A stretch of 64,000 nt of DNA from Octopus sinensis (GCF_006345805.1 NC_043019.1:26845360-26909359); one strand, 5' to 3'; counted from the first letter of the stretch, positions 1 through 53,996 are shown. The notes: generated by a model from the sequence alone, not told the origin. Numbers and translations are program-made.

Positions 1-1809
1 GATGAAGGAGAAAGAGAAGTAGGAGTAGGGAAAGAAGAAGAAGAAGAAGGAGAAAGAAAAGAAAAATACAGGAGTGCTGTGACATAGTAAATTGTTCGTG
101 GAGCCTTCTTTAATGCTCAAATGACCTAAAAGAGACCTGTTGTGGTTGTAGCAGTAGTGATTAGAATTGTTCTAAATTGTTGTAGTAGTTTCATTTGTGA
201 TGGGATTCAAAATAGGTTTCTATTTTGTGATCAATTAAAAGGTGACAGTTGCAAAAAAATCCAGTAGCAAGCAATGATGTCTCAATAAAACCACACAATC
301 AAGTGCTCAAGTGGTTTCACTTGAGTCGAATTGGTTTAAGTGGCCCCAACAGTCAAAGGTACTTGTGCCAACATGCCTTATATGCACAGAGATATGCATA
401 TATACATGCATCTCACACAAGTGCTGCAATCTGATAAGTATATATGCACGGTAATACACACACAAACATATAGGGCAGTTCTGAAAATTCCCAGCTTCAA
501 GGTTATTGCGAAAGACCTGGTTGGAGGCCCAACCTTCTGAGTTCTTTTACAAGGTTTAGAAAAACTGAAGGACCACTGCAATAAGTGTGTAAATCTGAGA
601 GAGGAATCATCATCATCATTTAATGTCTGCTTTCCATGCTGGCATGGGTTGGACGGTTTGACTGACGATTGGCAAGCCAAGAGGCTGAGCTGGGCTCCAA
701 TCTATTCTGGCTGGGTTTCTACAGCTGGATGCCCTTCCTAACACCAACCACTCCAACATTTTATGTGCCACCGGCATAAGGGCCAATCAGGTAGCACTGT
801 CAGTGACTTCGCTCAAATAGTGCTTTTTATGTGCCACCGAAATGGGAGCTAGTCAAGTGGCACTAGCACCAGAATGATGCTTTTTAGGTGCCACTGGCAT
901 AGGAGCCAGTCAAGTGGCACTGGCAACAACCACGCTTAAATGGTGCTTTTTACATGCCACTGGCATTGGTCACACTCAAATGGTGCTTTTTATGTACCAC
1001 TGGCATGGGTGCCAATCAGGAGGCATGAGGCATCAGCCACAACAACAATTTCACCTCTGAATGCACTCAAATATGTTAAATGAAATCATAATCAACAGAT
1101 CTTGCTGTATTTTCTTTTATTCAAAGCCAGGAACTTTTCAAGCACCACGCCCTGCCTCATACATTCTGTTAAAGAAGTCAGTTGTCCTGCTGAGTGAATA
1201 TCTCTTTGAAAGTCAAAGAGAAAGGAGAACTATGGACAACAGCTTCAAGACATCCAGTTTCTATATCCAGATTATAAATTCATATTTATGAATTGCCGGT
1301 GGCACATAAAAAGCACCATCCGATCGTGGCCGTTGCCAGCCTCACCTGGCCCCCGTGCCGGTGGCACATAAAAAGCACCATCCGTCCGTGGCCATTTGCC
1401 AGCTCCGTCTGGCACCTGTGCGGGTGGCACGTAAAAAGCACCCACAACACTCATGGAGTGGTTGGCATTAGGAAGTGCATCCAGCCGTAGAAACACTGCC
1501 AGATCAGACTGGGCCTGATGCAGCCTTCTGGCTTCACAGACCCCAGTTGAACCGTCCAACCCATGCTAGCATGGAAAACGGACGCTAAATGATGATGATG
1601 ATGATTTGCAGCGTGGAAGGTGTTTATAAGCCATTTAAGAAACACACAAAAACCGTTAGATTTACTTCAACAATTAAATTTAATTTGCCAAAATATTTTC
1701 ATCGCTTTGAGATTGTGACTTGTTCACTGACAAAATTCTGTGCTAGCACAGAAGAAGAATTCAAATACTTAAAAGCAAAAGATATATACATACATAATTC
1801 ACATTTATA

Positions 1810-2712: not shown

Positions 2713-17663
<14,951 letters not shown>

Positions 17664-18239
17664 GGTTACTGCCGCTTATATTGCTACTGTTGTTGTTGTT
17701 GTTGTAGCAGTTGGAGAACAAATTCTAACTGAATTCTTCTGAATGGTCCCTACCAGGGAAGAGGTGTCCCGGTAGAATGGTCAAAGCTTTGCAGTAAATC
17801 TTGTGCCTCCTAGAACCAGGTAGACTGATGTGTTGTGGCGTTTATGCCTCAGCCTTTTTGCAACTCTGATGGTGATGCTGACAATGTGACTATTTGGCTC
17901 TGACCAGGAATTGAAACTCGGTTCACCAAATCAGAATATAGATACCCTTTACTCTCTATTATAAGAGCCTTTGTTCAGATCCTTCTAAAATTAGTCTGAA
18001 GTAGTATTGGGGAAAAAAAAAAAAAAAGAAGGGCATAGAAACTATATCCCTTTCTTCTTTTTTTTTTTTTTTTTTATCTATTTTGGTTCAGTCGCTGTAT
18101 CTTCTGGCGCTGTTTCTTTCATGTGCATATATCGAATATACAAATTCTTGATAATTTTAAAATATTCACCGGGAATTCCTGAAAGTAAAAAATGAAAATA
18201 CAATATAAATTCAAGCATTTAAATCCCCCTCCTACTCCT

Positions 18240-18415
18240 CCTCATCATCATCGTCATCATCATCATCGCCATCATCGTCACCGTCGTCGTCGTCATCATC
18301 ATCATCGCCATCATCATCGTCATCGTCATCATCATCATCGCCGTCATCGTCCTCGTCATCATCATCATCGCCATCATCATCGCCGTCGTCGTCCTCGTCA
18401 TCATCATCATCATCA

Positions 18416-18461
<46 letters not shown>
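18240..18461. repeat. Compound (CAT/CGT)n-(TAT)n microsatellite
   Basis: Seen directly. Confidence 0.95.
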
Positions 18462-18464
<3 letters not shown>

Positions 18465-18660
18465 GGCAGTGAGCTGGCAGAATTGTTAGCATGACAGGCA
18501 AAATGCTTAGAGGTATTTTGTCTGTCTTTAGTTTCTGAGTTCAAATCCCACCGAAGTTGACTTTGCCTTTCATCTTTATGGGGGGTCAATAAAACAAGTC
18601 GATGTAATCAGTTTTACTCCTCCCCCGAAATTACTACCAAAATTTGAAACCATTATTACT
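18462..18660 (+). mobile_element. tRNA-derived SINE family C with (ATT)n tail, representative copy; others at about 18838, 28217, 28462, 34254, 48256, 53075-53690 and 53715
   Basis: AAGGC(A/G)G(T/C)GAGCTGGCAGAA...GAGTTCAAAT(T/C)CC...GACTTTGCCTTTCATC. Confidence 0.85.
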
Positions 18661-19802
18661 ATAATGATTATTATGGCGGCAAGCTGGAAGAATCATTGGC
18701 ACACTGAGTAGAATTTTGCCGATCACTATGTTCTGAGTTCAAATTCCACCGAGGGTCCATGTAATTGACCCTTCCCCTCCCCCAAAATGGCTACCCTTGT
18801 GGCAAAATTTGAAACCATTATTATCATTATGATTATTAAGGCAGCAAGCTGGCAGAATCGTTAGCACATCCGGACGAAATGCTTAGCAGTATCTCGTCTG
18901 CCACTACATTCTGAGTTCAAATTCCACCAAGGTCAATTTTGCCTTTCATCCTTTCAGGGTCAATAAATTAAGTACCTGTGAAACACTGGGGTCAATTTAA
19001 TCGACTAGTCCCCTCCCCACAAATCTGAGGCCTTGTGCCTCCAGTAGAAAGGATTATTATTATTACTATTATTATTATTATTATTATTAAATAATTAATA
19101 GCAATAGAAGCAGTATCAAAAACCAAAACGTAATACTTATTCCCATTAAAATAATTGTTGTGTTAGAACACAGGATACTGTTTTGTTTACCACGAGAGAA
19201 CTTCTCAAATGGGCTCTTGGTGCACATAAGCACTCACGTTTATATCTCAAGCAGGAGATAATTGTCTGCTACCACTGCAGGAACTAACAGATCATGTGAT
19301 TTCCCCTTCCCTAGGCTGTGTCAATGGTAGACAATCGCAGGTGGAGATAGCAACCGATTCTCAGTATCCCTGTTGGGGTTGATGAAATAAGCACCGTTTG
19401 AGCACTGGGATCAATGTAATTAACTTAACCCTGCCCCTGAAATTGCTGGCCTTGTGCCAAAATTTGAAATTAATATTTGCTTAATTTAGAGGTGACCATC
19501 CTTGCTTTGGAAAAAAAATAAGTAACTCAGAAAGGTTTTTGGTATGAAAGTTCCTGAAAATTGCTATTGTATCTATATGAGTGCAGAACCATTTATAAGC
19601 TGCATCAATTTACAAGCAGGAACTTCAAATTCCCACAGCTGCCAGACTAGTTTATTGAGCAGCTCTGTTTCATGGCACTTGCACAAAGCTATTAATAAGT
19701 CTCTATCACAATCATCGTTTCACACCTGTTTTCCAAGCTGCCAGGGGTTACCTGTATTTCATTTAATTACCTGGATAAATTTGATAATAGTTTAATCTAG
19801 AG

Positions 19803-22800
19803 AAGTGGTTCTCAACCAGGGTCTGTATGGCCCCTGGGGGTCTATATAAGGTTTTTAGGGGTCCACGCAACAAAATAATAAATTGGGGATCCATAATAGT
19901 ATTTTAAGGGCCCCTGAACAAATTTTACTTTAGATGCATTGATAAGTATTGCAAAAAAAAAAAAAACTAAACAGCTGGGTTTCTTTCTGACATTTTACAT
20001 TGTTCAACCTACAAAGGTTAATGTGTGGAAAACAAAATAGGAATTTTGAAAGGAGTTTGTAGAAAACTGGCTTTTAGACATTGAATGGCTATGGGGGTTA
20101 CCAGAATAAAATAGCAATCAAAGGGGTCCATAGATAAAGAATGGTTGAGAACCCCTGCTTTAGACATATGTATTGTTACGTTTTGCGAGAAACAGCTAGG
20201 GTTCTTTCTCCAACATTTTACATAGTTCAACCTACAGAAGTCAATGTGTGAAAAACAAAATAGGAATTCTGAAAGAAGTTTAGAATGGCTATGGGAGTCC
20301 ACCAGAATAAAATAGCAATCAAAGGGGTCCATAGATAAAAGAATGGTTGAGAACCCCTGCTTTGGATGTATGTATTGTTATGTTTTGCGAGAAACAGCTA
20401 GGGTTCTTTCTCCAACATTTTACATTGTTCAACCTACAGAAGTTCAATGTGTGAAAAACAAAATAGGAATTCTGAAGAAGTTTAGAATGGCTATGGGAGT
20501 CCACCAGAATAAAATAGCAATCAAAGGGGTCCATAGATAAAAGAATGGTTGAGAACCCCTGCTTTAGATGTATGTATTGGTATGTTTTGCACGAACCGGC
20601 TAGGTTTCTTTTTCTCACATTTTACATTGTTCAACCTACAGAAGTTAATGTGTGAAAAACAAAATAGGAATTCTGAAAGAAGTTTAGAATGGCTATGGGA
20701 GTCCACCAGAATAAAATAGCAATCAAAGGGGTCCATAGATAAAAGAATGGTTGAGAACCCCTGCTTTGGATGTATGTATTGGGATGTTTTGCACGGAACG
20801 GCTAGGTTTCTTTTTCTCACATTTTACATTGTTCAACCTACAGAAGTTAATGTGTGAAAAACAAAATAGGAATTCTGAAAGAAGTTTAGAATGGCTATGG
20901 GAGTCCACCAGAATAAAATAGCAATCAAAGGGGTCCATAGATAAAAGAATGGTTGAGAACCCCTGCTTTGGATGTATGTATTGGGATGTTTTGCACGGAA
21001 CGGCTAGGTTTCTTTTTCTCACATTTTACATTGTTCAACCTACAGAAGTTAATGAGTGAAAAACAAAATAGGAATTCTGAAAGAAGTTTAGAATGGCTAT
21101 GGGAGTCCACCAGAATAAAATAGCAATCAAAGGGGTCCATAGATAAAAGAATGGTTGAGAACCCCTGCTTTGGATGTATGTATTGTTATGTTTTGCGAGA
21201 AACAGCTAGGGTTCTTTCTCCAACATTTTACATAGTTCAACCTACAGAAGTCAATGTGTGAAAAACAAAATAGGAATTCTGAAAGAAGTTTAGAATGGCT
21301 ATGGGAGTCCACCAGAATAAAATAGCAATCAAAGGGGTCCATAGATAAAAGAATGGTTGAGAACCCCTGCTTTGGATGTATGTATTGGGATGTTTTGCAC
21401 GGAACGGCTAGGTTTCTTTTTCACACATTTTACATGTTCAACCTACAGAAGTTAATGTGTGAAAAACAAAATAGGAATCTGAAAGAAGTTTAGAATGGCT
21501 ATGGAGTCCACCAGAATAAAATAGCAATCAAAGGGGTCCATAGATAAAAGAATGGTTGAGAACCCCTGCTTTAGATGTATTATTGGTATGTTTTGCACGA
21601 ACCGGCTAGGTTTCTTTTTCTCACATTTTACATGTTCAACCTACAGAAGTTAATGTGTGAAAAACAAAATAGGAATTCTGAAAGAAGTTTAGAATGGCTA
21701 TGGGAGTCCCCAGAAGAATAAAATAGCAATCAAAGGGGTCCATAGATAAAAGAATGGTTGAGAACCCCTGCTTTGATGATGTATGGATTTTGGGATGTTT
21801 TGCACGGATCGGCTAGGTTTCTTTTTCACACATTTTACATTGTTCAACCTACAGAAGTTAATGTGTGAAAAACAAAATAGGAATTCTGAAAGAAGTTTAG
21901 AATGGCTATGGGAGTCCACCAGAATAAAATAGCAATCAAAGGGGTCCATAGATAAAAGAATGGTTGAGAACCCCTGCTTTAGATGTATGTATTGGTATGT
22001 TTTGCACGAACCGGCTAGGTTTCTTTTTCTCACATTTTACATTGTTCAACCTACAGAAGTTAATGTGTGAAAAACAAAATAGGAATTCTGAAAGAAGTTT
22101 AGAATGGCTATGGGAGTCCACCAGAATAAAATAGCAATCAAAGGGGTCCATAGATAAAAGAATGGTTGAGAACCCCTGCTTTAGATGTATGTATGGTATG
22201 TTTTGCACGAACCGCTATGTTTCTTTTTCTCACATTTTACATTGTTCAACCTACAGAAGTTAATGTGTGAAAAACAAAATGGAATTCTGAAAGAAGTTTA
22301 GAATGGCTATGGGAGTCCACCAGAATAAAATAGCAATCAAAGGGGTCCATAGATAAAGAATGGTTGAGAACCCCTGCTTTGGATGTATGTATTGGGATGT
22401 TTTGGCACGGAACGGCTAGTTTCTTTTTTCTCACATTTTACATTGTTCAACCTACAGAAGTTAATGTGTGAAAAACAAAATAGGAATTCTGAAAGAAGTT
22501 TAGAATGGCTATGGGAGTCCACCAGAATAAAATAGCAATCAAAGGGGTCCATAGATAAAAGAATGGTTGAGAACCCCTGCTTTGGATGTATGTATTGGGA
22601 TGTTTTGCACGGAACGGCTAGGTTTCTTTTTCACACATTTTACATTGTTCAACCTACAGAAGTTAATGTGTGAAAAACAAAATAGGAATTCTGAAAGAAG
22701 TTTAGAATGGCTATGGGAGTCCACCAGAATAAAATAGCAATCAAAGGGGTCCATAGATAAAAGAATGGTTGAGAACCCCTGCTTTAGATGTATGTATTGG

Positions 22801-23797
22801 TAGTTTTTTGCACCGAACCGGCTAGGTTTCTTTTTCTCACATTTTACATTGTTCAACCTACAGAAGTTAATGTGTGAAAAACAAAATAGGAATTCTGAAA
22901 GAAGTTTAGAATGGCTATGGGAGTCCACCAGAATAAAATAGCAATCAAAGGGGTCCATAGATAAAAGAATGGTTGAGAACCCCTGCTTTGGATGTATGTA
23001 TTGGGATGTTTTGCATGGAACGGCTAGGTTTCTTTTTCACACATTTTACATTGTTCAACCTACAGAAGTTAATGTGTGAAAAACAAAATAGGAATTCTGA
23101 AAGAAGTTTAGAATGGCTATGGGAGTCCACCAGAAATAAATAGCATCAAAGGGGTCCATAGATAAAAGAATGGTTGAGAACCCCTGCTTTAGATGTATTA
23201 TTGGTATGTTTTGCACGAACCGGCTAGGTTTCTTTTTCTCACAATTTTACATTGTTCAACCTACAGAAGTTAATGTGTGAAAAAAAAATAGGAATTCTGA
23301 AAGAAGTTAGAATGGCTATGGGAGTCCACCAGAATAAAATAGCAATCAAAGGGGTCCATAGATAAAAGAATGGTTGAGAACCCCTGCTTTAGATGTATGT
23401 ATTGGTATGTTTTGCACGGACGGCTAGGTTTCTTTTTCACATATTTTACATTGTTCAACCTACAGAAGTTAATGTGTGAAAAACAAAATAGGAATTCTGA
23501 AAGAAGTTTAGAATGGCTATGGGAGTCCACCAGAATAAAATAGCAATCAAAGGGGTCCATAGATAAAAGAATGGTTGAGAACCCCTGCTTTAGATGTATG
23601 TATTGGTATGTTTTGCACGGAACGGCTAGGTTTCTTTTTCACATATTTTACATTGTTCAACCTACACAAGGTAATGTGTGAAAAACAAAATAGGAATTCT
23701 GAAAGAAGTTTTCAAACATTCAAATGGCTATGAGGGCCCACCAAAATAAAATAGCAATCAAAGGGGTTTTTAGATACAAAATGGTTGAGAACCCCTG
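19803..23797 (+). mobile_element. hAT (Charlie-like) MITE whose right-hand 202 bp, including the TIR, is amplified into a 19-unit satellite
   Basis: Left TIR AAGTGGTTCTCAACC at 19803-19817. Right TIR GGTTGAGAACCCCTG occurs 19 times (20143 to 23783, period about 202). 8-bp TSD ATCTAGAG (19795) / ATCTAGAT (23798) fits the NTCTAGAN target preference of Charlie-type hAT elements. Confidence 0.88.
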
Positions 23798-24649
23798 ATC
23801 TAGATTGTGACCATCCCCTTTTGTTCGGTCGAATCAATAACCCAGGAAGGCTCTGGAACCAGAGGTTTTGGAAAATCAATGCCGTGCATGTGTGTTTCGT
23901 AGGGTATATAACGACAATTAGGATATGATACATTGTACAAAAGCCACAAAATGTATATTATGACTAGAAAACAGTATTACGTGCTAGAGAAAGTACCCTG
24001 CTTACCTGGTTGTATCACCCACACACAAACACACAACAAGGTAATAGGGTAAACTGACCCAGATAGTAGCAGAATTAGAAAAAGTCCAGACAGGTCAGTG
24101 GTGAGTGGATTGTCAGTAAATTATAGTAGTGTTAGCAGGCACTAAACAGAATTAGTCTGTTTACCCTCCACGCTAGGTTTTGTTTGCATCAACTATTGGT
24201 AAACAAAACAGCAGGTTTACAGAACTCTGTGTGTGTGTGTGCGTGTGTGTGTGTATGTGTGTTTGCATGTGGGTGTGTCACGTGTGTTGAGTATGTATGT
24301 GTCTGCGAATGGTTGGCTTGTGTGTAAGTGTGTTTGCTGGTTTGTGTTCATGTGCATGTGTGTGTGTGAATGACTGTTTATGTGTGTGTGCGTGTGTGTG
24401 TGAATATGTTCGTGTGTACAGTGTTGTGTATGTAAGTGTGCTGTGTTCTGTTGCGTGTGTGTGTGTATGAGTTGGTCAGTGTGTGTGATTATGTGTGTTG
24501 ACTTGTGAGCTTCAGGAGGAGTGGTTGTGTGTGTTGATTATACGAGTGTACGGGTGTGCATTATGCTGTTAGATAAACATATATATTCTTTTACTGGGTT
24601 CATTCATTGGACAGCGACCATGCTGTAGCACTGACTCCAAAGGTTTGCT

Positions 24650-24805
24650 CAATCCTTACATATATACATACCTATCTATATATACATATACATATAGAAA
24701 CATATATCTATATATACATACATATACACACATATATATATATACATATATATGCATATATATATACACATATATATACATTTATATATATACATATATA
24801 CATAC

Positions 24806-24882
<77 letters not shown>

Positions 24883-24959
24883 CATATATATATAATATAT
24901 ACATATATATATTATATATATATATATATATACATATATATATACATATATATATATAC

Positions 24960-24998
<39 letters not shown>

Positions 24999-25022
24999 AA
25001 CATATACATACATATATACACA

Positions 25023-26804: not shown

Positions 26805-28431
26805 TTATTACGTTTGAAAGTTTTTTATTCCTATGCTGGCCACCTGATAAGATCAGTATTTTAAATATCAATCTTATCTTTATTTATATATAATATATAT
26901 ATATATATATATCATCATATATATATATATAAGTAAATATAAATAAGTAAATATAAATATATAAATAGATATATACACACACGCATATATACACGTATAT
27001 ATATACAGATATAAGTATAAATAAATCAACATAGGTAGTTATGTATTTAAGCATAAACATAAAGACATAAACAAACCCACACACACATAACTATAGTGAA
27101 AAACAAAACATGCAATTAATCTCAATTATATAACAATGATAATAAACTATACCGAATCTTTGATGCTTCAAGTTATCATTGTCATGTTATCATGGCCTGT
27201 AATATCAGTGATGAAGTAGTAGTGATTCTACAGAAGTTGTAAGTAGAGAGGACTCTGGAGTTTGTCTGAAGTGTTTGCATTATCGTCTGATACTGATGAA
27301 TGAAGCGGGCGATGTAGAACTGAGCGCTGTGCAGTGAATGTCTCAGTTGATGCAATAATACACAGTGTTATGAAATAGCTGAAAATACGATGATGTCACT
27401 GCTAATGGGTGTGATGAAATAGTGACCGAGTATGATGAAATAGAGCATGAATGAGCTTGTAACAGATTAAATATGGTGACCCACAAACTGACAAATACCA
27501 GAAGATCCCTCAACTATGAATGGAATTCCTTACTCTAGGCTTTTTATGTTCTACCTTTTTATTAATGACAAGATAAATTAGGGTTTGTGTCTCTATATCG
27601 GTACTGCATTTAAGGGACTATCAGACATGCACCAAATGTCATCATTATCATCATTATCATCATTTAATGTCTGTTTTCCATGCTGGCATGGGTTGGACAG
27701 ATTGACTGAAAACTGGTAAGCTGGGGTGCTGCCCCAGGTTCCAATCTGGTTTGGCATAGTTTCTACAGCTGGATGTCCTTCCTGACACCAACCACTCCAA
27801 GAGTGTAGTGGGTGCTTTTTACGTGCCACCAGCACGGGTGCCACTTACAGAGTATTGGCATTGGCCATGACTACGATGTCACTTAGCTTGACAGATATTC
27901 TCAAGCACGGTATATTCTTTTCTACTCTAGGCACAAGACCCAAAATTTTGGGGGATGGGGCCAGTCAATTAGTTCTTAATTTATCGACCCTGAAAAATGA
28001 AAGGCAAAGTCGACCTTGGCGGAATTTGAACTCAGACAAAATACTGTTAAGCATTTCATCCCACGTCCCCGTAACTTAGCAGTTCGGCAAAAAGAGACCG
28101 ATAGAAGAAGTACTAGGCTTACAAAGAATAAGTCCTAGGGTTGATTTGCTCAACTAAAGGTGGTGCTCCAGCATGGCCGCAGTCAAATGACTGGAACAAA
28201 TAAAAGAAAAAAAACAAAGGTGGCAAGCTGGCAGAATTGTTAGCACACTGGATGAAATGCTTAGCAGTATTTCACCCACTGCTACATTCTGAGTTCAAAT
28301 TCTGCCAAGGTTGACTTTGCCTTTTATCCTTTTGGGGTCAATGAATTAAGTACCAGTGAAACACTGGGATCAATCGTAATCGGCTTATCCCCTCCCCCAA
28401 AATTTCAGGCCTTGTGCTCATAGTAGACAGG

Positions 28432-28463
<32 letters not shown>

Positions 28464-28594
28464 GGTGGTGAGCTGGCAGAATCATTAACATACCAGGCAA
28501 AATTCTTAGCAGCATTCCATCTGTCTTTGTGTTCTGAGTTCAATTTCCACCGAAGTTGCTTTTGTTTTTCATAAGCTTGAAATCAATACAATAG

Positions 28595-29375
28595 GCAGTG
28601 ATGATTAGATGTGACGACAACCGGTGATGGATGTGATGACAAGTGGAGATAGTTGTGATAACTGGTGATGGATGTGATGACAATTGATGATGGATGTGAT
28701 GACAACTGGAGATGGATGTGATGACGATTGGTGATGGATGTGATGACAATTGGTGATGGATGTGATGACGGTGAAGATAGCTGTGATGATAATGCTGATA
28801 GATGTGATGACAAGTGGAGATAGTTGTGATAACTGGTGATGGATGTGATGACAATTGATGATGGATGTGATGACAACTGGAGATGGATGTGATGACGATT
28901 GGTGATGGATGTGATGACAATTGGTGATGGATGTGATGACGGTGAAGATAGCTGTGATGATAATGCTGATAGATGTGATGACAAGTGGAGATAGTTGTGA
29001 TAACTGGTGATGGATGTGATGACAATTGATGATGGATGTGATGACAACTGGAGATGGATGTTATGACAATTGGTGATGGATGTGATGACGGTGAAGATAG
29101 CTGTGATGATAATGCTGATAGATGTGATGACAGCTGGTGATAGATGTGATGACAAGTGGAGATAGTTGTGATAACTGGTGATGGATGTGATGACAACTGG
29201 AGATGGGTGTGATGACAATTGGTGATGGATGTGATGACGGTGAAGATAGCTGTGATGATAATGCTGATAGATGTGATGACAAATGATGATACATGTGATG
29301 ACAGTAATGATGACAAAAAGATAGATGTGTTGACAATGGCGATAGATGCGATGACAACTCTAGTCATATGTGATG
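28595..29375. repeat. 22-bp minisatellite (GATGACAATTGGTGATGGATGT) with 149-171-bp higher-order repeats
   Basis: Higher-order marker GTGAAGATAGCTGTG at 28771, 28942, 29091 and 29240. Confidence 0.92.
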
Positions 29376-31764: not shown

Positions 31765-32097
31765 AAAAACTGACTTGGAATCCAACAGAGATAAAAAATA
31801 TTGATTGCTAAACACCCAAGTTTATTCCGATATTTTATTAGCAACTACAATTACAAAATCGGGTCAGAATTGAGGAAAAATTTCTTGATAAAAATAGTAC
31901 CTATCTATCATCTAACTAAATTCTAAACTCTCTCAATAACAACAACAAAATGATGCTGACCAATTTTTCTCCCAAAGATGATGCAACAGTAAAAAGTGAT
32001 GATGCAATACTTCCAATTTAACGATTTCAAACAGGCTGGAAGAAGATAACGAGCAATCAGAATTTACGCATTTTACCTTGTTTACTAATTATATATC

Positions 32098-32612
32098 ACT
32101 AGCAGTATCGCCCGGCGTTGCTCGGGTTTGTAAGGGAAATAACTATATAAGCATTTTTAGAGAGTAACTTCCCTTATAGATGCCAATTTGGGCTTTCTTA
32201 GCCATTTCTGTTTTGGTGTCTTCAAGCCATGCAGTTGTTGTTCTAAAAGAACGCTGGTCTCCTTGACAACGCTTTACGACGTTAATTTCCTTACACTCCC
32301 TTCCCCACAGCTTCACGAGGGAGGGAAGAAGGGGGAGAAGCAAACAGGTGCAGGTGTGACCATGGACGCCAACTCCGCCGCCATCGACACACGAAAAATT
32401 ATGCATTAAAATGGAATGAAAAATGATGTTAAATTATTTTTAAAATCGTAGACTCATCGTAGACGCGCGCTAATACTCAGACGGGCTCGATATTAATCAC
32501 GACTATAAGATACCCAAATTTGGTTACACTGCACCGCAAAATGTGGGAGTAGTTAGGAATCTAAATCGAAGGGGACAGACACTCACACAACTACAGTTTT
32601 ATATATATAGAT
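32098..32612 (+). mobile_element. Non-autonomous Helitron/Helentron-like element (Lep1/HINE type)
   Basis: Begins ACTAGCAGTATCGCCCGGCGTTGCTCGGG (5' hairpin) and ends GACAGACA...TTTTATATATATAGAT; CpG-rich, so probably young. Classification from recalled family termini. Confidence 0.7.
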
Positions 32613-32696
32613 TTATTGGGTCATCCCATAAATAATGTAGCTTTTTTTATACTTCTTTTATCTTTCAAAATTAAGATAAACAAAGTTCTTTTTTAA

Positions 32697-33757: not shown

Positions 33758-34520
33758 AAGGCCCTAGGGTGAATACTGCTGTGTATATTGAGGTGTTCAG
33801 GATAAAGTTGTTAAGTATTGGATTAACAGTGTATGCAATAGAAGGCCTTATGTCTTTCAACAAGATTCTACACCATCACACAGGGCTCAAATGACACATG
33901 AACGGATGGCCAACAATTTGCATGATCACATAACCCCCAACATTTGGCCTCCTAATTTTTCAGGTCCAAATCCACTGGACTACTATGTATGAAGCATTGT
34001 TGAGAAAAATGTCAATGACCACCCCCATAACACCAAAGATTCTTTGAAAGCTACCATAGTTTGAGTCATGTCTGAGCTGAACAAGGACCACTTAATCCAA
34101 GCTGGTAAATGATTTCGACCCTGCATAGAGGCAGTTAGCGATGCTTATGGTGGTTTTAGTGAATGAAATTATTAAATTGATAGTTTATCTTAATGTTTCA
34201 TGTTATTTTTATTAAAATACAGATTTTTTTTCTGTTATTATATAAGTGGCTTAAGGCAATGAGCTGGCAGAAATGCTAGTACACCAGGCAAAATGCTTAG
34301 AGGTATTTCATCTGTCTTTACGTTCTGGGTTCAAATTCCCCCGAGGTCAACTTTGCCTTTCATCCTTTTGGGGTTGATAAATTAAGCACCAGTTGCATAC
34401 TGGGGTCGATCTAATTGACTTGCCCCATCCCCCAAAATTTTGAGCCTTGTGCCTAGTGTAGAAAAGATTATATAAGCAGTTTTTAAAACTATAAATCTGT
34501 CCTCAAATACAGTCCGCACC

Positions 34521-38415: not shown

Positions 38416-38696
38416 AATATAACCACTGGCTAGGCACACCACCAATATTCCCATCCTCCTCCCCGATTCACCCCTCTTCCTCCTCTCTGAAGAAGAGGGG
38501 CGAATCGGGGAGGAGGAAGGGGGGGAGGCGAATTGGAGGAGGAAGAGGAGGGAATTGGGAGGAAGAGGGGCGAATTGGGGAGGAGGAAGAGGGGCAAATC
38601 AGGGAGGACGAAGAGGGGTGATCGAGGAGGAGGAAGAGGGGTGAATCGGGGAGTAGGATGGGAATAGTGGTGGTGTGCCTAGCCAGTGGTTATATT
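38416..38696. mobile_element. Fold-back element: about 70-bp inverted arms around a G-rich minisatellite (unit about 22-24 bp)
   Basis: AATATAACCACTGGCTAGGCACACCACC... / ...GGTGGTGTGCCTAGCCAGTGGTTATATT; internal (GAGGAGGAAGAGGGGCGAATCGGG)n. Confidence 0.75.
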
Positions 38697-38701
38697 TAGA
38701 T

Positions 38702-39073
38702 TTGTGGTTCTCAACCGTTTCCCTTTTTTTTTAAACCTATGGATCCCTTTAGTACTCATCCACCCCACAATCATTCGCAGTTTTAAAAACTGGTGTCGTG
38801 GATACTTCTTTCAAAATTCCCATTTTGCTTTCCCCACATTCACTTGTGTAGGTTTGCAACAGAACTTGCTGAGAGAACATGTTTCAACGGCCAGAAACAT
38901 GTTGCATTATGTAAAACATGATGGAAAGAAATTGAGGTCTTTCTTAAGTAGCTTGCTTACCAACCACATGGTTCCAGGTTCAGTCTCACTCTGTGGTACC
39001 TCGGGCAATTGTCTTCTACAATAGTTTCGGGCCGAACAAAGCCTTGTGCGGGGATTTGGTAAATGGAAGCTTG

Positions 39074-39113
<40 letters not shown>

Positions 39114-39435
39114 GTTTGTGTGTCTGTGTCGCCCCAACATCACTTGACAACCGATGTTGGTGTGTTTATGTCCCAGTAACTTAGCAATTCGGCAAAAGAA
39201 ACCGATAGAATAAGTACTAGGCTTACAAAGAATAAGTCCTGGAGTCAATTTGTTTGACTAAAGGCGGTGCTCCAGCATGGTCGCAGTCAAATGACTGAAA
39301 TGAGTAAAAGCAGAAATTTTTCAGGGACCCTTAAAATACTACTATAGATCCCCAATTACTATTTTGCTTGCATGGACCCCACAAGAATCTTATAAGGACC
39401 CCAGGGGTCACAGGGACCCTGAGTGAGAACAACTG
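38702..39435 (-). mobile_element. Unamplified inverted copy of the same hAT MITE, interrupted by a SINE (about 38940-39305)
   Basis: 39320-39435 is the reverse complement of about 19803-19920, and 38702-38890 is the reverse complement of the satellite unit. Flanks ATTTAGAT / ATCTAGCT. Confidence 0.8.
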
Positions 39436-40426
39436 ATCTAGCTGGTAATTAGTATGGCAGATGTAATATAAGTTATGGTATTGGTCCTTAATTACTAAGG
39501 ACATTCCAGCTGGGACCACCCCACGCTAGGAACTTAGCACCTTGTTAACCAATATGTCTTAACCCTCTTGGGACATCTAGGGATCCTTCATTGGTGTGGG
39601 TTGATATTGGAGCAGGTTAGGGGTCGCTAGGGGCTGTTGGAATGTGTTAGCTTAGTCACTGTGAAGGTGGTGGTTAATATTGTTTATTTCAGGTTAATCC
39701 TGACTGAGCAGACTAATGGCTAAAGACTGATATTCCAACCATGACAATCCAGATTGGTTTTATGCAAACACATTGTATCAAGCTAGGGACCATTGTGATT
39801 TCAAAGAGGTTTGGCTGCTATATCTAGCAGGTTGAGTGGCCCCCCACATACAGGTGCCACATCAGAATGTGAAGGTGGTAGTTGACTTGATGCAGATCAG
39901 TTGACGGCAGTTGACTTAAATGACAGCAGTTGACATAGATGGCAGTAATTGACACAGATGGCAGCGGTCGATTTAACAATAGTGTAAAGCAGAATGGTGA
40001 TTGTAGAAAGGGACATTAGAAACAGCAGTAGCAGTAGTAGTAGTAGAAGGCAGCCTTAGTTGTGGCAGCAGTGACAGTGCATTGGTACCAGGAGTAGTGG
40101 TGGTGGTGGTAGTAGTGGCAGCTTAAACAGTAGTTGCTGTTGTAGGCGCCTATTAAAGGCAATGTGTGTGTGGGGGGAGGTGATGGTAGTTGTTGTTGTC
40201 ATGGGCAACAATGACGAGGTAGTGATGGGTGGAGTGGGGGTGGCAATGGTGATGGCGGTGGTGTAATGGTGATCCTAATGTTCTCTAATTGCATTCCAAT
40301 CAGCAGAAATGAATAAAACAAGTCGTTAATTAAATGAGTAATTAACACAGCAAAGCTGTTAGGGGAGAATTAATTAATGAGGGTTATTTTTGAGGATACA
40401 TCAACATGTTTGGGTATATATATATA

Positions 40427-47145: not shown

Positions 47146-48719
47146 TAGCGAGGTAGATAGATAGATAGAAATCGTTCAATAGTATATTTCTGGTTTTGGC
47201 ATATAACAGGCCAGTCATATGCCATAACCAGCAAGACTGCCGGACAATATAAAACTTTAATTATTCAAATTCTCCTTCAGTGTGTGTTTGTGTGTACAAA
47301 TGCAAACGTACACATAATGTCACCGCTTAACCATTAATGTTTACTGAGCCTATATATGGTCGCACATACTGCTAGTAATAGCTCAAAACCATGCTATACC
47401 GTGCCGTCTTAGAGAAGGTCAGGTACGATAACGTGGTCCCAGATTTATCTGCACGGTTTCTTTCGTCATAAGTCGCCTTACTCAATTAAGATTAACCCGC
47501 GGCTAAACAACAACATTGCTAATTTGGCGGCATGCTTGTTAATCTTCGCATGGTTCTTATATCTTTCTCATGTAACACTATCAGCCTTACATTCGTCCAG
47601 TCACCATCTGCCAACCAGCCACTCACCCACCTGTACACTGTTCAGTGAGGTTTTATATTGCTTACGTTTACCTGCCGATCTTAATAAACGGAGGTAGTTG
47701 AGGACGTGGCATCGTTCAAGATGTGTAAATAAAACGATAATTACAAATAAGAATATGTTATATATTCTTTGTATTTCTTTGTAATTTAAAAAGCACAGGT
47801 GGGTCTGGATCTATCGAACACGATCATTTGCGCATATCACGCTGTGGTCGCGAACCCGGAACCTCGTAATTGAGAAGCGAATAACTTGAACATTTAGCCA
47901 TACCGATTTATTATTTTATTTTTATTCATACGTTTACATACATGCATGCACACACACACAAAATGGTTGAAATATGAGCTTGAAGGGAATCAGAAAAAAA
48001 GTGTAGCATCCATGTTAATGAATGTTGGAATCGTAGGCGAATGACCAATTACATGTGGCATTGAATCAATCTTGATAAAGTCCAGCATTTTAGAACACCA
48101 TGTGCCAGACATCTCAATGAGAAACAGGTGTGTGGAAAGCAGCATGCAGAAACCAGTGTGTGTGTGTGTGTGTGTGTAATATATTAATATACATGTATGT
48201 GTGTGTATATAGATATATAATATATTAATATATGTGTGTGTGTGTGTGTGTGGACGGTGAGCTGGCAGAATCGTTAGCACATTGGGCGAAATGCTTAGCA
48301 GTATTTCGGCTACCGTCATGTTCTGAGTTCAAATTCTGCCAAAGTCAACTTTGCTTTTCATCCTTTTGGGATTGATTAAATAAGTACCAGTTACGATGCA
48401 GCACGGATTTTGTCAGTGAACAGGTTGTGGTCTTAAAGCGACGAAAATATTTTAACAAATTAAACTTAAATGTTGAAGTGAATCGAACGGCTTTTGTGTG
48501 TTTCTTAAATGGCTTACAAACACCTTCCACGCTGCAATTGTTTTCGTTTCAGCACACGATCTCAGATCAGGTCACTTGCTATGCAAGTACATCTCCGTAG
48601 TTACGTACTGTTGTTGATGTAATCAACTTAATCCCTTTGTCTGTCCTTGTTTGTCCCCTCTATGTTTAACCCCCTGTGGGCAATAAATAAATAAATATAT
48701 ATATATTTCCTTTTGTTCT

Positions 48720-49378: not shown

Positions 49379-50324
49379 CAAGCCTCATACAATCTACCTT
49401 TCACCCAGAGAGCAAAGCCTTTCATTACAAATGGAGGTAATAATTTTCTGAACTTTCTCCAGCCAGTTCTTATCCTAGCAATTTACCCCATATGTAGCAT
49501 ATATATATATATATGGCCTATGCTAGGGGTGTAACTAGTCCACTTATGCATGCCTTTCTTCATTGGACACTAAACTCAGCTTGCGAAGACCAGTTGAGGC
49601 AAGTGAAATCGAAATCAAAGTCAAAATCAAATCCGTTGCTAGTGGAGCACTAAGAGTACCATACGAGTGAGATCGTTGCCAGAGCAACAAGCTGGCCTTC
49701 ATGCCGATGGCATGTTAAGCACACCATTCGAGCGTGATCGTTACCGAGTTGCCTTACTAGCACTTGTGCTGGTGGCACGTGAAACATTTGAGCGAGGTCG
49801 TTGCCAGTGCCACTGGACTGGCTCCTGTGCAGGTGGCACATAAAAAGCACCATTTGGGCGTGGCCATTGCCAGTACCACCAAACTGGCCCTCGTGCCGGT
49901 GGCACGTAAAAGCATCCACTACACTCTCGGAGTGGTTGGCGTTAGGAAGGGCATCCAGCTGTAGAAACTCTGCCAGATCAGATTGGAGTCTGGTTCGCCA
50001 GACCTCAGTCAAATCTTCCAACTGATGCTAGCATGGAAAGCGGACATTAAATGATGATGATGATGATATATATATATATGTAAAAGCGCCTGTGCAATGC
50101 TATGTAACAGTGCTTGTGTGATGCCATATAATAGTGCCCATGCAGTGGTATGTAAAAGCACCCAGCACATTCTGCAAAGTGGTTGGTGTTAGGAAGGGCA
50201 TCCAGCCATAGAAATCATGCCCAAACAGACTGGGGTCTGGTGTAGCCTACCAGCTTGGTCAAACTCTTCAACCCATGCCAGCATGGACAACAGATGGTGA
50301 TGATGATGATGATGATGATACATA

Positions 50325-50625
<301 letters not shown>

Positions 50626-53032
50626 CAAACATATTAGTTTCAAGTGTTTCTTTACCATCAGGTTAAGGATATAATTGGGAAGGAGAAGGTTGTGAAATGA
50701 TAGTAAAAGTAAAATGAAAGTGAGCAGAAGGACGAGTAGAATATGTGTCATACTTAACTGGAGTAGCATACAGGGAAAGAGTAAGAGAATTCAAATGAGA
50801 GTGAATTGGAGTGAGCAGTATGACAAGGAATAACAGGTATATTGACAGAAAATCAGATAATAACTGTATCCCTAACCTTATATACACAGATATGCACATT
50901 CTTTTATTATTTTACTTGTTTCAGTCATCTTGACTGCAGCCATGCTGGAGCACCGCATTTAGTCGAACAAATTGACCCCAGGATTTATTCTTTGTAAGCC
51001 TAGCACTTATCCTATGGGTCTCTTTTGCTGAACCGCTAAGTTATGGGGACCTAAACACACCAACATCGGTTGTCAAGCAATGGCGAGGGGACAAACACAG
51101 ACACACACACATAAAGTAACAAACTGAGGAAAAGGAATCTTTCAAAGGGGTGTGTTAGACATCCAGTTCACTGGTACATCAGTTGGATACCACATAACTT
51201 TATACACACACACACATACATATATTTATACAAAGAGCTTCTCTCAGTTTCCGTCTACCAAATCCACTCACAAGGCTTTGGTTGGCCTGAGGCTATAGTA
51301 GAAGACATTTTACCAAAGTGCCACGCAGTGGCACTGAACCTGGAACCATGTGGTTTGGTAAGCAAGCTACTTACCATACAATGCGTAGATATAAGGATAT
51401 AATATATATATGTATATTTATATATAGACACATACTACATATATACTGACATTTCTCTGTGATTATAAAGCTAGCATATCCCAACTACATGGTTGTGGGT
51501 TCAGTCCCACAGCAAAGCACCTTTGATGAGTGTCTTCTGCGATAGACTGGGGCCGATGAAAGGTCATGTGGGTAGATTTGGTAAAGCAAAATGATAAGAA
51601 ACCCCCTTATACATGTACTCATATATGTGCACACACATACACACACATGCACATGTATATGTGTGTGTGTCTATAAATGTATGTATGTATGTAGTTCTCT
51701 TTCTCCTTTTTGATTAAGAATTACTTTTCACTGGTCACCTACTCATTAGCAAGGGTGTGAAAGAAAGCATCTTGTTTTCTTAATCATCCTTTAAATCTTA
51801 AGAAGGTGTTGCAGACTTTTATAATCCCAGATATTTCTTACCATTTGTAGTGTATTAATTAAAGAATTGCATTCTCTCCCCAAAAACCTAAGTCCAGCTC
51901 TACGTTGCTCCAGACAGAGTTATAATAATAATAAAAATAATAATAATGAAATTCATGCCGGTGGCACGTAAAAAGCACCATCCGTTCGTGGCCGTTGCCA
52001 GCCTCGCCTGGCCCCCGTGCCGGTGGCATGTAAAAAGCACCATCCGATGGTGGCTGTTGCAGGCCCCGCCTGGCCCCCGTGCCGGTGGCATGTAAAAAGC
52101 ACCATCCGTCCGTGGCCGTTTGCCAGCCCCGTCTGGCACCTGGTGCGGGTGGCACGTAAAAAGCACCCACTACACTCATGGAGTGGTTGGCGTTAGGAAG
52201 GGCATCCAGCCGTAGAAACACTGCCAGATCAGACTGGGCCTGATGCAGCCTTCTGGCTTCCCAGGCCCCAGTTGAACCGTCCAACCCATGGAAAGCGGAC
52301 GCTAAATGATGATGATGATGATGATTGTATACAATGCTCAGGTGCACCACAACTTGTCAAAAGTGCATATAAAGCATATGCAGTAATGTACAAATGTCTG
52401 GAAAAGGGACAGTGTATGAGTCAGATACATGCTTGCGTGTGTATGGAGGGGAGAAAATCAGGTGTAGTGTTGGCGAATCTCAGAAAGCATGGAAGTTTTG
52501 AAGGATGCAGTGCTCCGACAACTAACAACTGATGCTGGCAGTTTGTTCCATACTCCAGCAACTCTTAGCGTGAAAAAATGTCATAGGTTCATAAAACCTG
52601 AGTCATACGTTGATAAGGCTGTTTTCCAGATTCCGTAGATCCATTTTCTGGATTTTGTGGTATATATTATATTCCACTCACATCACAAAATTATTCATTT
52701 TAGCCAGCAGAATGGACAAGGGTAATATGAAACAAAAGTAATTTGCTTAAGAATACAATGCTTAGCTCTATCCAGGATTTGAAACTACAACCTTACAATC
52801 ATCAGTGAAACACACTAACCTCTTAACCACATGCTTCCATATATAGTAAGATGGTGAGTCACATTTACCTCTGCCTGTAATCTTCCACTCTCAGACAATA
52901 CTGAGTACGCAATAAAAAGAATTTCATACAACCTTCCAAACTTTTTTTACAGACGAACTATAATTATTTTCATTAAATTGGTGACAAATGGTATAGGAAT
53001 CAAATGATACTATTCAATAAATTAGTAATAAT

Positions 53033-53829: not shown

Positions 53830-53996
53830 TACCATATTTTAAGATGTATAAGGAACCCTCTAATTTTTGGGGGCTTAAAATTTGGAAAAAAAGTTTTGTA
53901 AGGGATTATGATGCTATCCATGTATAAGAAACTCCCATATTTTTTAAACCTAATTTTTGACAAAAAAGGGTTCCTTATACACGTTAAAATACAGTA
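53830..53996. mobile_element. Tc1/pogo-type MITE inserted at a TA inside a SINE
   Basis: Ends TACCATATTTTAAGATGTATAAGGAACCC / GGGTTCCTTATACACGTTAAAATACAGTA (including the TA TSD); splits the SINE motif GATAAAT-TA-AGTACCAG. Confidence 0.8.

What the first reader, a model, noticed from the sequence alone, without database searches (positions are those of the whole stretch)
19795..23805. Satellite born from a hAT MITE: 19 copies of the right TIR, each joined at a transposase-target-like octamer
Seen: one left TIR and 19 right TIRs lie inside a single TSD pair (ATCTAGAG / ATCTAGAT). Almost every internal TIR is followed by CTTTAGAT or CTTTGGAT, the octamer also found inside the original element at 19928-19935. 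The unit therefore runs from that internal octamer to the TIR tip. Established: Charlie-type hAT elements target NTCTAGAN. Inference: the founding duplication may have been a one-ended or sister-chromatid transposition of the right end into the element's own target-like site, or slippage between the internal octamer and the TSD, followed by unequal exchange. Edge units are more divergent than central ones, and three unit variants are interleaved. A non-amplified relative at 38702-39435 serves as an in-window control.
Basis: partly seen in the sequence, partly recalled or inferred. Interest (0 to 1): 0.7.

Follow-up and report, generated by a model that had tools for sequence, protein, structure and literature searches.

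The report
Tandem array grown from one hAT MITE
A small non-coding hAT transposon in an octopus genome has had its right two-thirds copied 19 times head-to-tail, and the repeat joint looks like one transposase-made insertion into the element itself that was later multiplied by unequal recombination; this is a clear example of a known process, not a new kind of system.

Summary
Between the 8-bp duplications ATCTAGAG (19795-19802) and ATCTAGAT (23798-23805) lie one left end and 19 right ends of a SPIN/Charlie-like hAT MITE. Each of the 18 internal right tips (…GAGAACCCCTG) abuts CTTTAGAT or a one-step derivative. That octamer is the one found once inside the original element, at 19928.

The octamer is a real target for this kind of transposase. 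It fits the published NYYTARRN target consensus for elements with this end. In an unrelated host, elements with the same 15-bp tip use CTTTAGAT itself as their target-site duplication.

The joint begins with C, as the internal octamer does, and not with A, as the flank does. This argues against slippage between flank and octamer. It favours strand transfer of the right tip into the element's own octamer, either by hybrid-element (sister-chromatid) insertion or by a same-orientation nested insertion.

The 18 joints are copies of one event, because joint variants travel with unit variants. Growth was by unequal exchange: edge units are 9.5-11% divergent and central ones about 3.5-5%, with mosaic variants.

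This is one 3.9-kb locus, not a demonstrated genome-wide satellite. TE-derived arrays and hAT-made duplications are both already described. Interest is modest.

The parts
19795..19802 (+). Left target-site duplication, ATCTAGAG
   Evidence: It matches 23798-23805 at 7 of 8 positions and fits NYYTARRN.
19803..19927 (+). Left arm of the MITE, present once. It starts with the left TIR AAGTGGTTCTCAACC, a decayed CAGTGG…
   Evidence: It is the only left-end-oriented TIR in the region. It is 81% identical to 39434-39307 of the relative, whose tip reads CAGTTG.
19928..19935 (+). Internal octamer CTTTAGAT, the inferred self-target and the first 8 bases of every repeat unit
   Evidence: It is one of only two NTYTARAN sites and four NYYTARRN sites in the 355-bp founder. 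The same octamer is the TSD of three distinct elements with the same TIR tip in other DNA.
19928..20157 (+). Unit U01 (230 bp). This edge unit has the ancestral long form and an A14 run.
   Evidence: It keeps the 23-bp segment that the relative also has and that U02-U18 lack. Its mean distance to the other units is 11.1%.
20158..23587 (+). Units U02-U18 (198-206 bp). Each ends in …GGTTGAGAACCCCTG and each begins CTTTAGAT, CTTTGGAT or a derivative.
   Evidence: The alignment and unit table are. All 17 units share the derived 23-bp deletion.
23588..23797 (+). Unit U19 (210 bp), the edge unit carrying the terminal right TIR at 23783-23797
   Evidence: Its mean distance to the other units is 9.5%. 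It has its own smaller deletion. Its tip is followed by the TSD, not by the octamer.
23798..23805 (+). Right target-site duplication, ATCTAGAT
38702..39435 (-). Diverged, non-amplified family member in inverted orientation. Its TSD is ATTTAGAT (38694-38701) / ATCTAGCT (39436-39443).
   Evidence: blastn and a global alignment to the founder. The TSD matches at 6 of 8 positions, and the 38694-38701 copy fits NYYTARRN; the 39436-39443 copy departs from it at position 7 (C instead of R).
38945..39317 (-). SINE-like insert inside the relative, with an (AT)n run. It sits at the position homologous to the octamer.
   Evidence: At least 15 related copies are in the window. The founder/relative alignment breaks there. 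An ORF from it hits an Octopus vulgaris predicted protein.

Best explanation
Step 1. A roughly 355-bp non-autonomous hAT element with a SPIN/Charlie-like terminal repeat inserted at ATCTAGAK and made the usual 8-bp duplication.

Step 2. Later, a hAT transposase joined a right-end tip (…CCCCTG-3'OH) to the octamer CTTTAGAT inside a copy of the same element. That octamer is the best match to the family's target consensus in the element's left half and one of only two NTYTARAN matches in the whole element.

Two routes give the observed layout: left arm, octamer, right part, octamer, right part.
(a) A hybrid-element (sister-chromatid) insertion. The left end on one sister chromatid and the right end on the other act as one element and insert into the octamer of one copy. 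The left arm is lost as a circle.
(b) An ordinary same-orientation nested insertion of a sister or sibling copy into that octamer. This gives left-left-right-right, after which the two-copy left repeat collapsed back to one.
I cannot separate (a) from (b).

Step 3. Unequal sister-chromatid exchange and gene conversion then multiplied the tail-to-internal dimer to 19 units. A variant with a 23-bp deletion swept the centre, later variants were shuffled into mosaics, and the two edge units stayed old.

Shown: the anatomy, the family type, the target-likeness of the octamer, that there was one founding junction, and the edge/centre pattern. Inferred: that the transposase made the junction, and which route it took.
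For: (1) The junction is exact. All 18 internal joints lie between the last base of the TIR (…CCCCTG) and the first base of the octamer, with no filler and no loss.

(2) The ends match a published hAT group. The right end is CAGGGGTTCTCAACC and the left is AAGTGGTTCTCAACC. Anolis SPIN_AC has the TIR CAGYGGTTCTCAACCT, and the related families SPIN_NA1 and hAT-N1_AC have the TSD consensus NYYTARRN (PMC3014272). CTTTAGAT, the array's own TSD and one copy of the relative's TSD (ATTTAGAT) all fit it; the relative's other copy, ATCTAGCT, misses it at position 7.

(3) Elements with the same tip in other DNA use such octamers.
- A metagenome scan found more than 120 host-derived contigs carrying this exact 15-bp tip followed by CTTT.
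- Of 57 distinct left/right TIR pairs, 38 have the octamer repeated at 7/8 or better at the other end. Shuffled partners give about 5. So these octamers are true TSDs.
- After the imposed CTTT, position 5 is A in 60 of 66 ends, position 6 is G in 40 of 66, and position 7 is A in 40 of 66.
- CTTTAGAT itself is the TSD of three distinct elements.

(4) Target-like sites are rare in the founder. Only 4 of 348 octamers fit NYYTARRN and 2 fit NTYTARAN. A random breakpoint pair landing on the tip and on such a site has a probability of about 3e-5.

(5) Position 1 of the junction octamer is C in 18 of 18, as in the internal octamer. It is A in both flank TSD copies.

(6) hAT transposases are known to do this.
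- Ac ends inserting into the sister chromatid make tandem direct duplications whose endpoints coincide precisely with element termini and carry the 8-bp target (PMC3744419).
- A hobo array of 13-19 copies grew from one transposase-made dimer, and tail-to-internal tandem junctions can be formed by nested insertions (PMC5932611).

(7) Growth by unequal exchange.
- The junction A/G state co-segregates with unit type.
- U02-U18 share one derived 23-bp deletion that U01 and the relative lack.
- Edge units are 9.5-11% divergent against about 3.5-5% in the centre.
- Units U15, U18 and U19 are mosaics of the other types.
Against: - There was only one founding event, so the 'precise junction at a target-like site' is a single observation picked out after the fact.
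- No other array of this family could be examined.
- In 956 kb of another host's DNA holding at least 57 elements with the same tip, no same-orientation end arrays were found. Such events are therefore not common.
- The metagenome evidence was selected for CTTT after the tip, so positions 1-4 of those TSDs are uninformative.
- Those elements share only the TIR with this one; there is no other similarity.
- No transposase gene or active partner was seen in the window.
- The relative does not show whether the octamer belongs to the ancestral family sequence.
Confidence: 0.6

Rival explanations
1. Slippage or unequal exchange between two similar octamers. The right-flank TSD (ATCTAGAT) and the internal octamer (CTTTAGAT) match at 6 of 8 positions and lie 230 bp apart. 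Misalignment of them during replication or sister exchange would duplicate the segment between them. No transposase would be involved.
For: The two octamers share T at position 2 and TAGAT at positions 4-8. The unit boundaries coincide with them. Short-homology duplications are common, and this window holds other local duplications.
Against: A crossover inside the shared bases gives a hybrid octamer that keeps the flank's first base: ATTTAGAT or ATCTAGAT. All 18 junctions read CTTT…, and both TSD copies have A at position 1. Rescue needs a crossover in non-homologous sequence 5' of the octamer (…CCCCTG against …ATTTTA), or a later specific A-to-C change fixed before expansion. At about 9% divergence that change has a probability of roughly 0.03.
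Confidence: 0.12
2. Autointegration circle. The excised element attacked its own octamer and produced a deletion circle made of exactly one unit (octamer to right tip). Rolling-circle copying of that circle, followed by homologous reintegration into a resident copy, then built the array.
For: Autointegration of cut-and-paste transposons gives two deletion circles or an inversion circle (PMC3952818). The predicted circle has exactly the observed unit and junction.
Against: It needs three further rare steps: circle survival, rolling-circle copying and homologous reintegration. Autointegration was shown for Sleeping Beauty and piggyBac, not for hAT, in the paper read. A burst from one circle would give near-identical units. 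The observed graded, mosaic variant pattern with old edge units fits slow unequal exchange instead.
Confidence: 0.06
3. Coincidence. An ordinary tandem duplication by end joining or template switching happened to break at the TIR tip and just before the octamer.
For: It is a single event noticed post hoc. The window is full of tandem arrays built from interspersed repeats.
Against: The joint chance of hitting the exact tip (about 1 in 355) and one of four NYYTARRN starts (4 in 348) is about 3e-5. There is no microhomology or filler at the joint.
Confidence: 0.07
4. The array is real but its length or internal order is partly an assembly product, through collapse or expansion of near-identical 202-bp units in noisy long-read data.
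For: Among U02-U18, private indel columns (20) are as frequent as private substitutions (23). Variants shared by several units are mostly substitutions (14 against 3). Unit lengths scatter between 198 and 206 bp only from U08 onward. U17 differs from U04 and U11 by indels only.
Against: Distinct unit variants, mosaics and two divergent edge units anchor the structure. Artefacts would not create 9.5-11% divergent edges or a consistent junction.
Confidence: 0.15

Closest known systems
hobo (hAT) tandem array in Drosophila melanogaster strain I03, and the 'double insertion then unequal exchange' route to satellites (McGurk & Barbash 2018, PMC5932611)
   Same: Both involve a hAT-superfamily element. 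Both have about 13-19 tandem copies at one euchromatic locus. In both, every junction carries the same 8-bp target octamer, all copies descend from one transposase-made dimer, and growth was by unequal exchange. The paper also notes that tail-to-internal tandem junctions can arise from nested insertions.
   Different: There, whole elements lie head-to-tail (TIR, TSD, TIR) after a second insertion at the same genomic site. Here only the right two-thirds of a MITE is repeated, the left end is single, and the target was inside the element.
Alternative transposition of maize Ac/Ds: reversed-ends and sister-chromatid transposition, with P-element hybrid-element insertion as the analogue (Zhang, Zuo & Peterson 2013, PMC3744419)
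   Same: hAT ends taken from different copies or chromatids insert into a nearby site on the sister chromatid. This makes a tandem direct duplication whose endpoint is exactly the element terminus joined to an 8-bp target.
   Different: There, two separate elements in a special orientation duplicate kilobases of host DNA and yield two copies. Here a single 355-bp MITE is both donor and target, and the dimer went on to 19 copies. The event here is inferred, not observed.
MITE-derived tandem arrays and satellites, e.g. the hAT-derived gadMor-hAT-1784/8043 MITE arrays of Atlantic cod (PMC12368964), and the cases reviewed in PMC9659126
   Same: Non-autonomous hAT-derived sequence is arranged in tandem units of about 170-200 bp.
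   Different: In cod the repeats form long composite TIRs of a mobile family present at several loci. No TIR-tip/target-octamer junction logic is described there. Here the array is one locus inside one TSD pair.
SPIN / hAT-N1-type non-autonomous hAT families, related to mammalian Charlie elements (Novick et al. 2010, PMC3014272)
   Same: The TIR is CAGYGGTTCTCAACCT there and CAGGGGTTCTCAACC / AAGTGGTTCTCAACC here. Both have an 8-bp TSD fitting NYYTARRN and a MITE size of a few hundred bp.
   Different: Only the terminal 15 bases are shared, and internal sequence was not compared. The host here is an octopus, and no autonomous partner was identified.

Membership tests
hAT superfamily, non-autonomous (MITE) | 8-bp target-site duplication | tested here: met
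   ATCTAGAG / ATCTAGAT match at 7 of 8 around the whole array. The relative has ATTTAGAT / ATCTAGCT at 6 of 8.
hAT superfamily, non-autonomous (MITE) | Short TIRs with the terminal motif YARNG | tested here: met
   The right end reads CAGGG… when reverse-complemented. The left end reads AAGTG (C-to-A decay). The relative's homologous end reads CAGTT. The YARNG criterion is taken from PMC3014272.
hAT superfamily, non-autonomous (MITE) | Target consensus of the nTnTAnAn / NYYTARRN type | tested here: met
   Three of the four TSD copies in the window fit NYYTARRN; ATCTAGCT departs at position 7. Elements with the same tip in other DNA show TA at positions 4-5 and R at positions 6-7.
hAT superfamily, non-autonomous (MITE) | Small size, no transposase ORF, multicopy family | tested here: inconclusive
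   The founder is 355 bp. Its ORFs have no homologues. Only two family members are in the 64-kb window. Genome-wide copy number could not be tested.
SPIN family proper | Sequence identity to the SPIN consensus beyond the TIR, and a cognate SPIN transposase | not tested
   Only the 15-16-bp TIR was compared with the published string. I therefore call it 'SPIN/Charlie-like TIR', not a SPIN member.
Satellite DNA | Head-to-tail tandem repetition of a monomer | tested here: met
   19 units with a 202-bp period.
Satellite DNA | High copy number, long arrays or several loci in the genome | not testable with these tools
   It is one 3.9-kb array. No second array is in the window or in the one O. vulgaris locus reached. 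The protein-route and DNA-pattern searches found none.
Transposase-made (alternative-transposition or nested-insertion) duplication | Duplication endpoint coincides exactly with an element terminus joined to an intact copy of the 8-bp target | tested here: met
   The joint is …CCCCTG|CTTTAGAT, and the same octamer is present once at 19928 in the first unit.
Transposase-made (alternative-transposition or nested-insertion) duplication | Reciprocal product or intermediate (deletion chromatid, excised circle, or left-left-right-right nested state) | not testable with these tools
   This needs the orthologous locus in other individuals or species.

The most novel reading that the evidence does not exclude
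Self-targeted hybrid-element insertion may be a recurrent way that hAT MITEs seed satellites. In it, a hAT transposase pairs the two ends of one MITE across sister chromatids and inserts them into the MITE's own best target octamer. If so, octopus genomes (and others rich in SPIN-like MITEs) should hold many independent arrays. Their units would always run from an internal NYYTARRN octamer to a TIR tip, or, in the mirror product, from the TIR tip to such an octamer. That would give a sequence-readable signature of transposase-made satellite birth.
Probability: 0.15. Interest if true: 0.6.

Novelty: new member of a known kind. Interest (0 to 1): 0.35.

Why it matters
How a dispersed transposon turns into a tandem array is usually unreadable, because the founding junction has decayed. 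Here the junction is intact. It discriminates between slippage and a transposase-made joint through a single base: C rather than A at octamer position 1. If the same signature recurs genome-wide, it would extend the 'double insertion' and 'alternative transposition' routes to an intra-element version that needs only one MITE. As it stands it is one locus. It adds an example from a cephalopod, not a new principle.

Tried and rejected
Searches that found nothing:
- The 139-aa ORF spanning two units, meant to reach other arrays through called ORFs.
- Exact-ORF look-ups of the 56-aa and 99-aa array ORFs in public assemblies.
- Viral-contig scans for the right end and for a unit-internal 24-mer.
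- A bacterial/archaeal genome scan for the junction.
- Rfam on 18000-25000.
- Full-text search for strings from the SINE-like repeat.
- The supplement of the O. vulgaris repeat paper, which holds no TE sequences.

Searches that gave something other than intended:
- The metagenome scan for tip + CTTT found no arrays. It found more than 120 ordinary MITE ends in another host. These were useful for TSDs but are unrelated in sequence to this window.
- The search for same-orientation end pairs in those 956 kb gave three pairs. The two inspected (in L081 and L002) were adjacent, unrelated elements; the pair in L020 was not inspected.
- The GTPase exon search did not name the organism. The SINE-like ORF did.

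Readings considered and rejected:
- The unit is a small MITE of its own. Its two ends are not inverted repeats.
- The array arose from 18 independent insertions. The units lack left ends and share derived changes.
- The array has a regular higher-order repeat. Mean distance is flat, at 3.5-4%, for lags of 1 to 6 units.


Full report
**Observation.**
- TRF finds a single array at 20083-23805 with period 202, 18.4 copies and 94% matches.
- The exact string GAGAACCCCTG occurs 19 times on the + strand, with tips from 20157 to 23797.
- With up to three errors allowed, the only left-end-oriented copy in the region is AAGTGGTTCTCAACC at 19803.
- The 8 bp before that end are ATCTAGAG. The 8 bp after the last tip are ATCTAGAT.
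- The 18 internal tips are followed by CTTTAGAT (8), CTTTGGAT (8), CTTTAGAC (1) and CTTTGATG (1, in an indel-ridden unit).
- CTTTAGAT occurs at 19928-19935, 125 bp in from the left end.

The layout is therefore: TSD, left arm (19803-19927), then 19 units running from 'octamer' to 'right tip', then TSD. The units are U01 at 230 bp, U02-U18 at about 202 bp and U19 at 210 bp.

**What the element is.**
- The founder (left arm plus U01) is 355 bp and has no ORF with homologues.
- Its ends read CAGGGGTTCTCAACC (right, reverse-complemented) and AAGTGGTTCTCAACC (left).
- The lizard DNA-transposon survey lists SPIN_AC with the TIR CAGYGGTTCTCAACCT. It lists SPIN_NA1_AC and hAT-N1_AC with near-identical TIRs and the TSD consensus NYYTARRN. 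It gives 8-bp TSDs and YARNG termini as the hAT hallmarks, and it places these families near mammalian Charlie elements (PMC3014272).
- The array's TSD, the internal octamer and the relative's ATTTAGAT copy all fit NYYTARRN; the relative's other TSD copy, ATCTAGCT, departs from it at position 7 (C instead of R).
- I file the element as a hAT MITE with a SPIN/Charlie-like end. I do not file it as a SPIN member, because nothing beyond the TIR was compared.

**The in-window relative.**
- blastn of the founder against the window finds one other family member, at 38702-39435.
- It is in inverted orientation. One arm is 81% identical over 130 bp and the other 68% over 151 bp.
- It has one left and one right end.
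- It is interrupted by a SINE-like repeat (about 38945-39317) at exactly the position where the octamer would be.
- It therefore shows that single-unit members exist, and that the 23-bp segment present in U01 but absent from U02-U18 is ancestral.
- It cannot show whether the octamer belongs to the family consensus.

**Is the octamer a real target?** Inside the founder only 4 of 348 octamers fit NYYTARRN. Only 2 fit the tighter NTYTARAN: CTTTAGAT at 19928 and TTTTAGAC at 20072.

A scan of public metagenome contigs for the 15-bp tip followed by CTTT returned more than 120 eukaryote-derived contigs, each with one match.
- These are ordinary MITEs of other families. They share no other similarity with the window.
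- Pairing each right end with the nearest left end gave 57 distinct elements of 131-1074 bp.
- In 38 of them the 8 bp beyond the two ends agree at 7/8 or better. Shuffled partners give about 5 (that script listed each element on both strands, so I halved its counts).
- The CTTTnnnn octamers are therefore true TSDs.
- After the imposed CTTT, position 5 is A in 60 of 66 ends, position 6 is G in 40 of 66 and position 7 is A in 40 of 66.
- CTTTAGAT itself is the TSD of three distinct elements.
- Caveat: positions 1-4 were imposed by my pattern, and these are other families in another host.

**How the founding junction was made.** They make different predictions.

Misalignment of the right-flank TSD (ATCTAGAT) with the internal octamer (CTTTAGAT) would place the crossover inside their shared bases. 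The hybrid would then keep the flank's first base: ATTTAGAT or ATCTAGAT. Both TSD copies have A at position 1, yet all 18 junction octamers start with C. To rescue slippage, one needs a crossover in the non-homologous bases just upstream (…CCCCTG against …ATTTTA), or a specific A-to-C change fixed before expansion.

Strand transfer of the right tip into the internal octamer predicts exactly what is seen. The last TIR base is joined to an intact copy of the octamer, with no filler and no microhomology. A random breakpoint pair would hit the tip and one of the four consensus sites with a probability of about 3e-5.

**Routes that use the transposase.**
(a) Hybrid-element or sister-chromatid insertion. 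The left end on one sister and the right end on the other behave as one element and insert into the octamer of one copy. The left arm closes into a lost circle. The chromatid becomes left arm, unit, unit in one step. Ac does the equivalent in maize: it makes tandem direct duplications whose endpoints coincide precisely with element termini and carry the 8-bp target. P-element hybrid-element insertion is the Drosophila analogue (PMC3744419).
(b) An ordinary same-orientation insertion of a sister or sibling copy into the octamer. This gives left-left-right-right, that is, two 2-copy tandems. The left one then collapsed to one copy and the right one grew. McGurk and Barbash note that tail-to-internal tandem junctions can come from nested insertions. 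They document a 13-19-copy hobo array grown from one transposase-made dimer (PMC5932611).
(c) Autointegration of the excised element. This makes a circle of exactly one unit (PMC3952818). It needs rolling-circle copying and reintegration, and it fits the variant pattern less well.

I cannot separate (a) from (b) with this sequence.

**One event, then recombination.**
- The A/G state in the junction octamer travels with the unit type. B-type units have CTTTAGAT. C-type units and most A-type units have CTTTGGAT.
- U02-U18 all share a derived 23-bp deletion that U01 and the relative lack.
- So the 18 junctions are copies of one junction, not 18 pieces of evidence.
- Mean substitution distance to the other units is 11.1% for U01 and 9.5% for U19, against about 3.4-5% for most central units. 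U01 against U19 is 15.8%.
- Twelve diagnostic columns sort the units into types. A is U02, U03 and U07. B is U04, U09, U11, U12 and U17. C1 is U05, U06 and U13. C2 is U08, U10, U14 and U16.
- U15, U18 and U19 are mosaics of these types.
- There is no regular higher-order period. Mean distance is flat at lags of 1 to 6 units.
- All of this is the usual signature of unequal exchange and conversion, with edges that seldom take part.
- The roughly 9-11% divergence of the edge units and the decayed left tip suggest that the founding events are old.

**Data quality.**
- Among U02-U18, private indel columns (20) are about as common as private substitutions (23).
- Variants shared by several units are mostly substitutions (14 against 3).
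- Unit lengths wander only from U08 onward.
- This looks like long-read consensus noise. The copy number and the fine order in the right half need raw-read confirmation. The structure itself is anchored by distinct variants and by the edge units.

**Context.**
- The window is eukaryotic and dense in microsatellites.
- An ORF from its abundant SINE-like repeat matches a 'Hypothetical predicted protein [Octopus vulgaris]'.
- The 20-kb O. vulgaris locus around that gene shares 202 blastn segments with the window. The best is 96.8% over 528 bp.
- So the source is O. vulgaris or a close relative.
- O. vulgaris is reported to hold 134 hAT families covering 16.6 Mb (PMC13282606 supplement).
- The window also holds other arrays built from interspersed repeats: 226 bp x 6.4 at 53995-55436, and 185 bp x 4 at 56263-57000 with an inverted partner at 57303-57671.
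- It also holds a duplication with a 1,472-bp offset at 99.7% identity, aligned over 633 bp.
- Turning dispersed repeats into local arrays is thus commonplace in this genome.

**Comparison and verdict.**
- TE-derived tandem arrays are well described. So are hAT-MITE arrays (cod, PMC12368964), transposase-founded hAT arrays (hobo) and hAT-made tandem duplications (Ac).
- What is particular here is the intra-element version. One MITE is both donor and target, and the joint is intact enough to rule on its origin by a single base.
- That makes it a tidy new member of a known kind.
It could not be run, because every route to further octopus DNA failed.

Noticed in passing
window 53995-55436: A 226-bp unit repeated 6.4 times at 98% identity. 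The unit is related (70-85%) to dispersed copies at 18451-19065, 28217-28572, 34251-34471, 48256-48379, 53343-53830 and 57254-57382. This is another interspersed-repeat-derived array.
   Followed up: partly
window 56263-57000 and 57303-57671: A 185-bp unit repeated 4 times (85-90% identity), with two more units in inverted orientation 300 bp downstream. Together they form an inverted pair of arrays, also related to dispersed copies.
   Followed up: partly
window 9828-10459 and 11300-11932: A local duplication with a 1,472-bp offset, 99.7% identical over the 633 bp aligned. It includes a 62-bp internal tandem repeat and a (TG)n run. I did not map its full extent.
   Followed up: partly
window 931-1010, 1294-1442, 6582-6848, 10184-10342, 11656-11814, 49785-49911, 51956-52167: A dispersed element family carries a variable internal 62-63-bp tandem repeat (GGTGCTTTTTACGTGCCACCGGCACG…), with 1.9 to 4.2 copies per locus.
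   Followed up: no
window 38945-39317: The SINE-like insert in the MITE relative sits exactly at the position homologous to the octamer CTTTAGAT, after …CCCTGAAAAATTT. I do not know whether this is chance or a shared fragile or target site.
   Followed up: no
window 6975-7313 (- strand): An open exon encodes a translation-type GTPase G domain (Pfam GTP_EFTU, PF00009, in the hits). The best hits are 90% identical. The array lies about 12.5 kb away, and I did not determine whether it is in an intron of this gene.
   Followed up: no
window 21370-23587: Units from U08 onward carry many single-base indels and few private substitutions. U17 differs from U04 and U11 by indels only. This looks like long-read consensus error, not biology.
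   Followed up: partly
L001-L120 (JGI24021/24022/24158/24159, Ga0210059, Ga0209450, JAAUYM01 contigs): These 'metagenome' contigs are eukaryotic host DNA packed with 131-1074-bp MITEs. The MITEs share the exact tip GGTTGAGAACCCCTG but have different subterminal motifs (GGGGTAAA, GGGGTACA, GGGCCAC). The host was not identified.
   Followed up: partly
window 28599-29303: A nested 22-bp / 171-bp array (GATGTGATGACAACTGGTGATG…) stays open for 279 codons on the - strand. It is probably a repeat artefact, not a gene.
   Followed up: no
window 32089-32614 and L121 13978-14505: A 528-bp repeat is 96.8% identical between the window and an Octopus vulgaris chromosome (OX597823.1). This points to a young repeat family and to a source very close to O. 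vulgaris.
   Followed up: no
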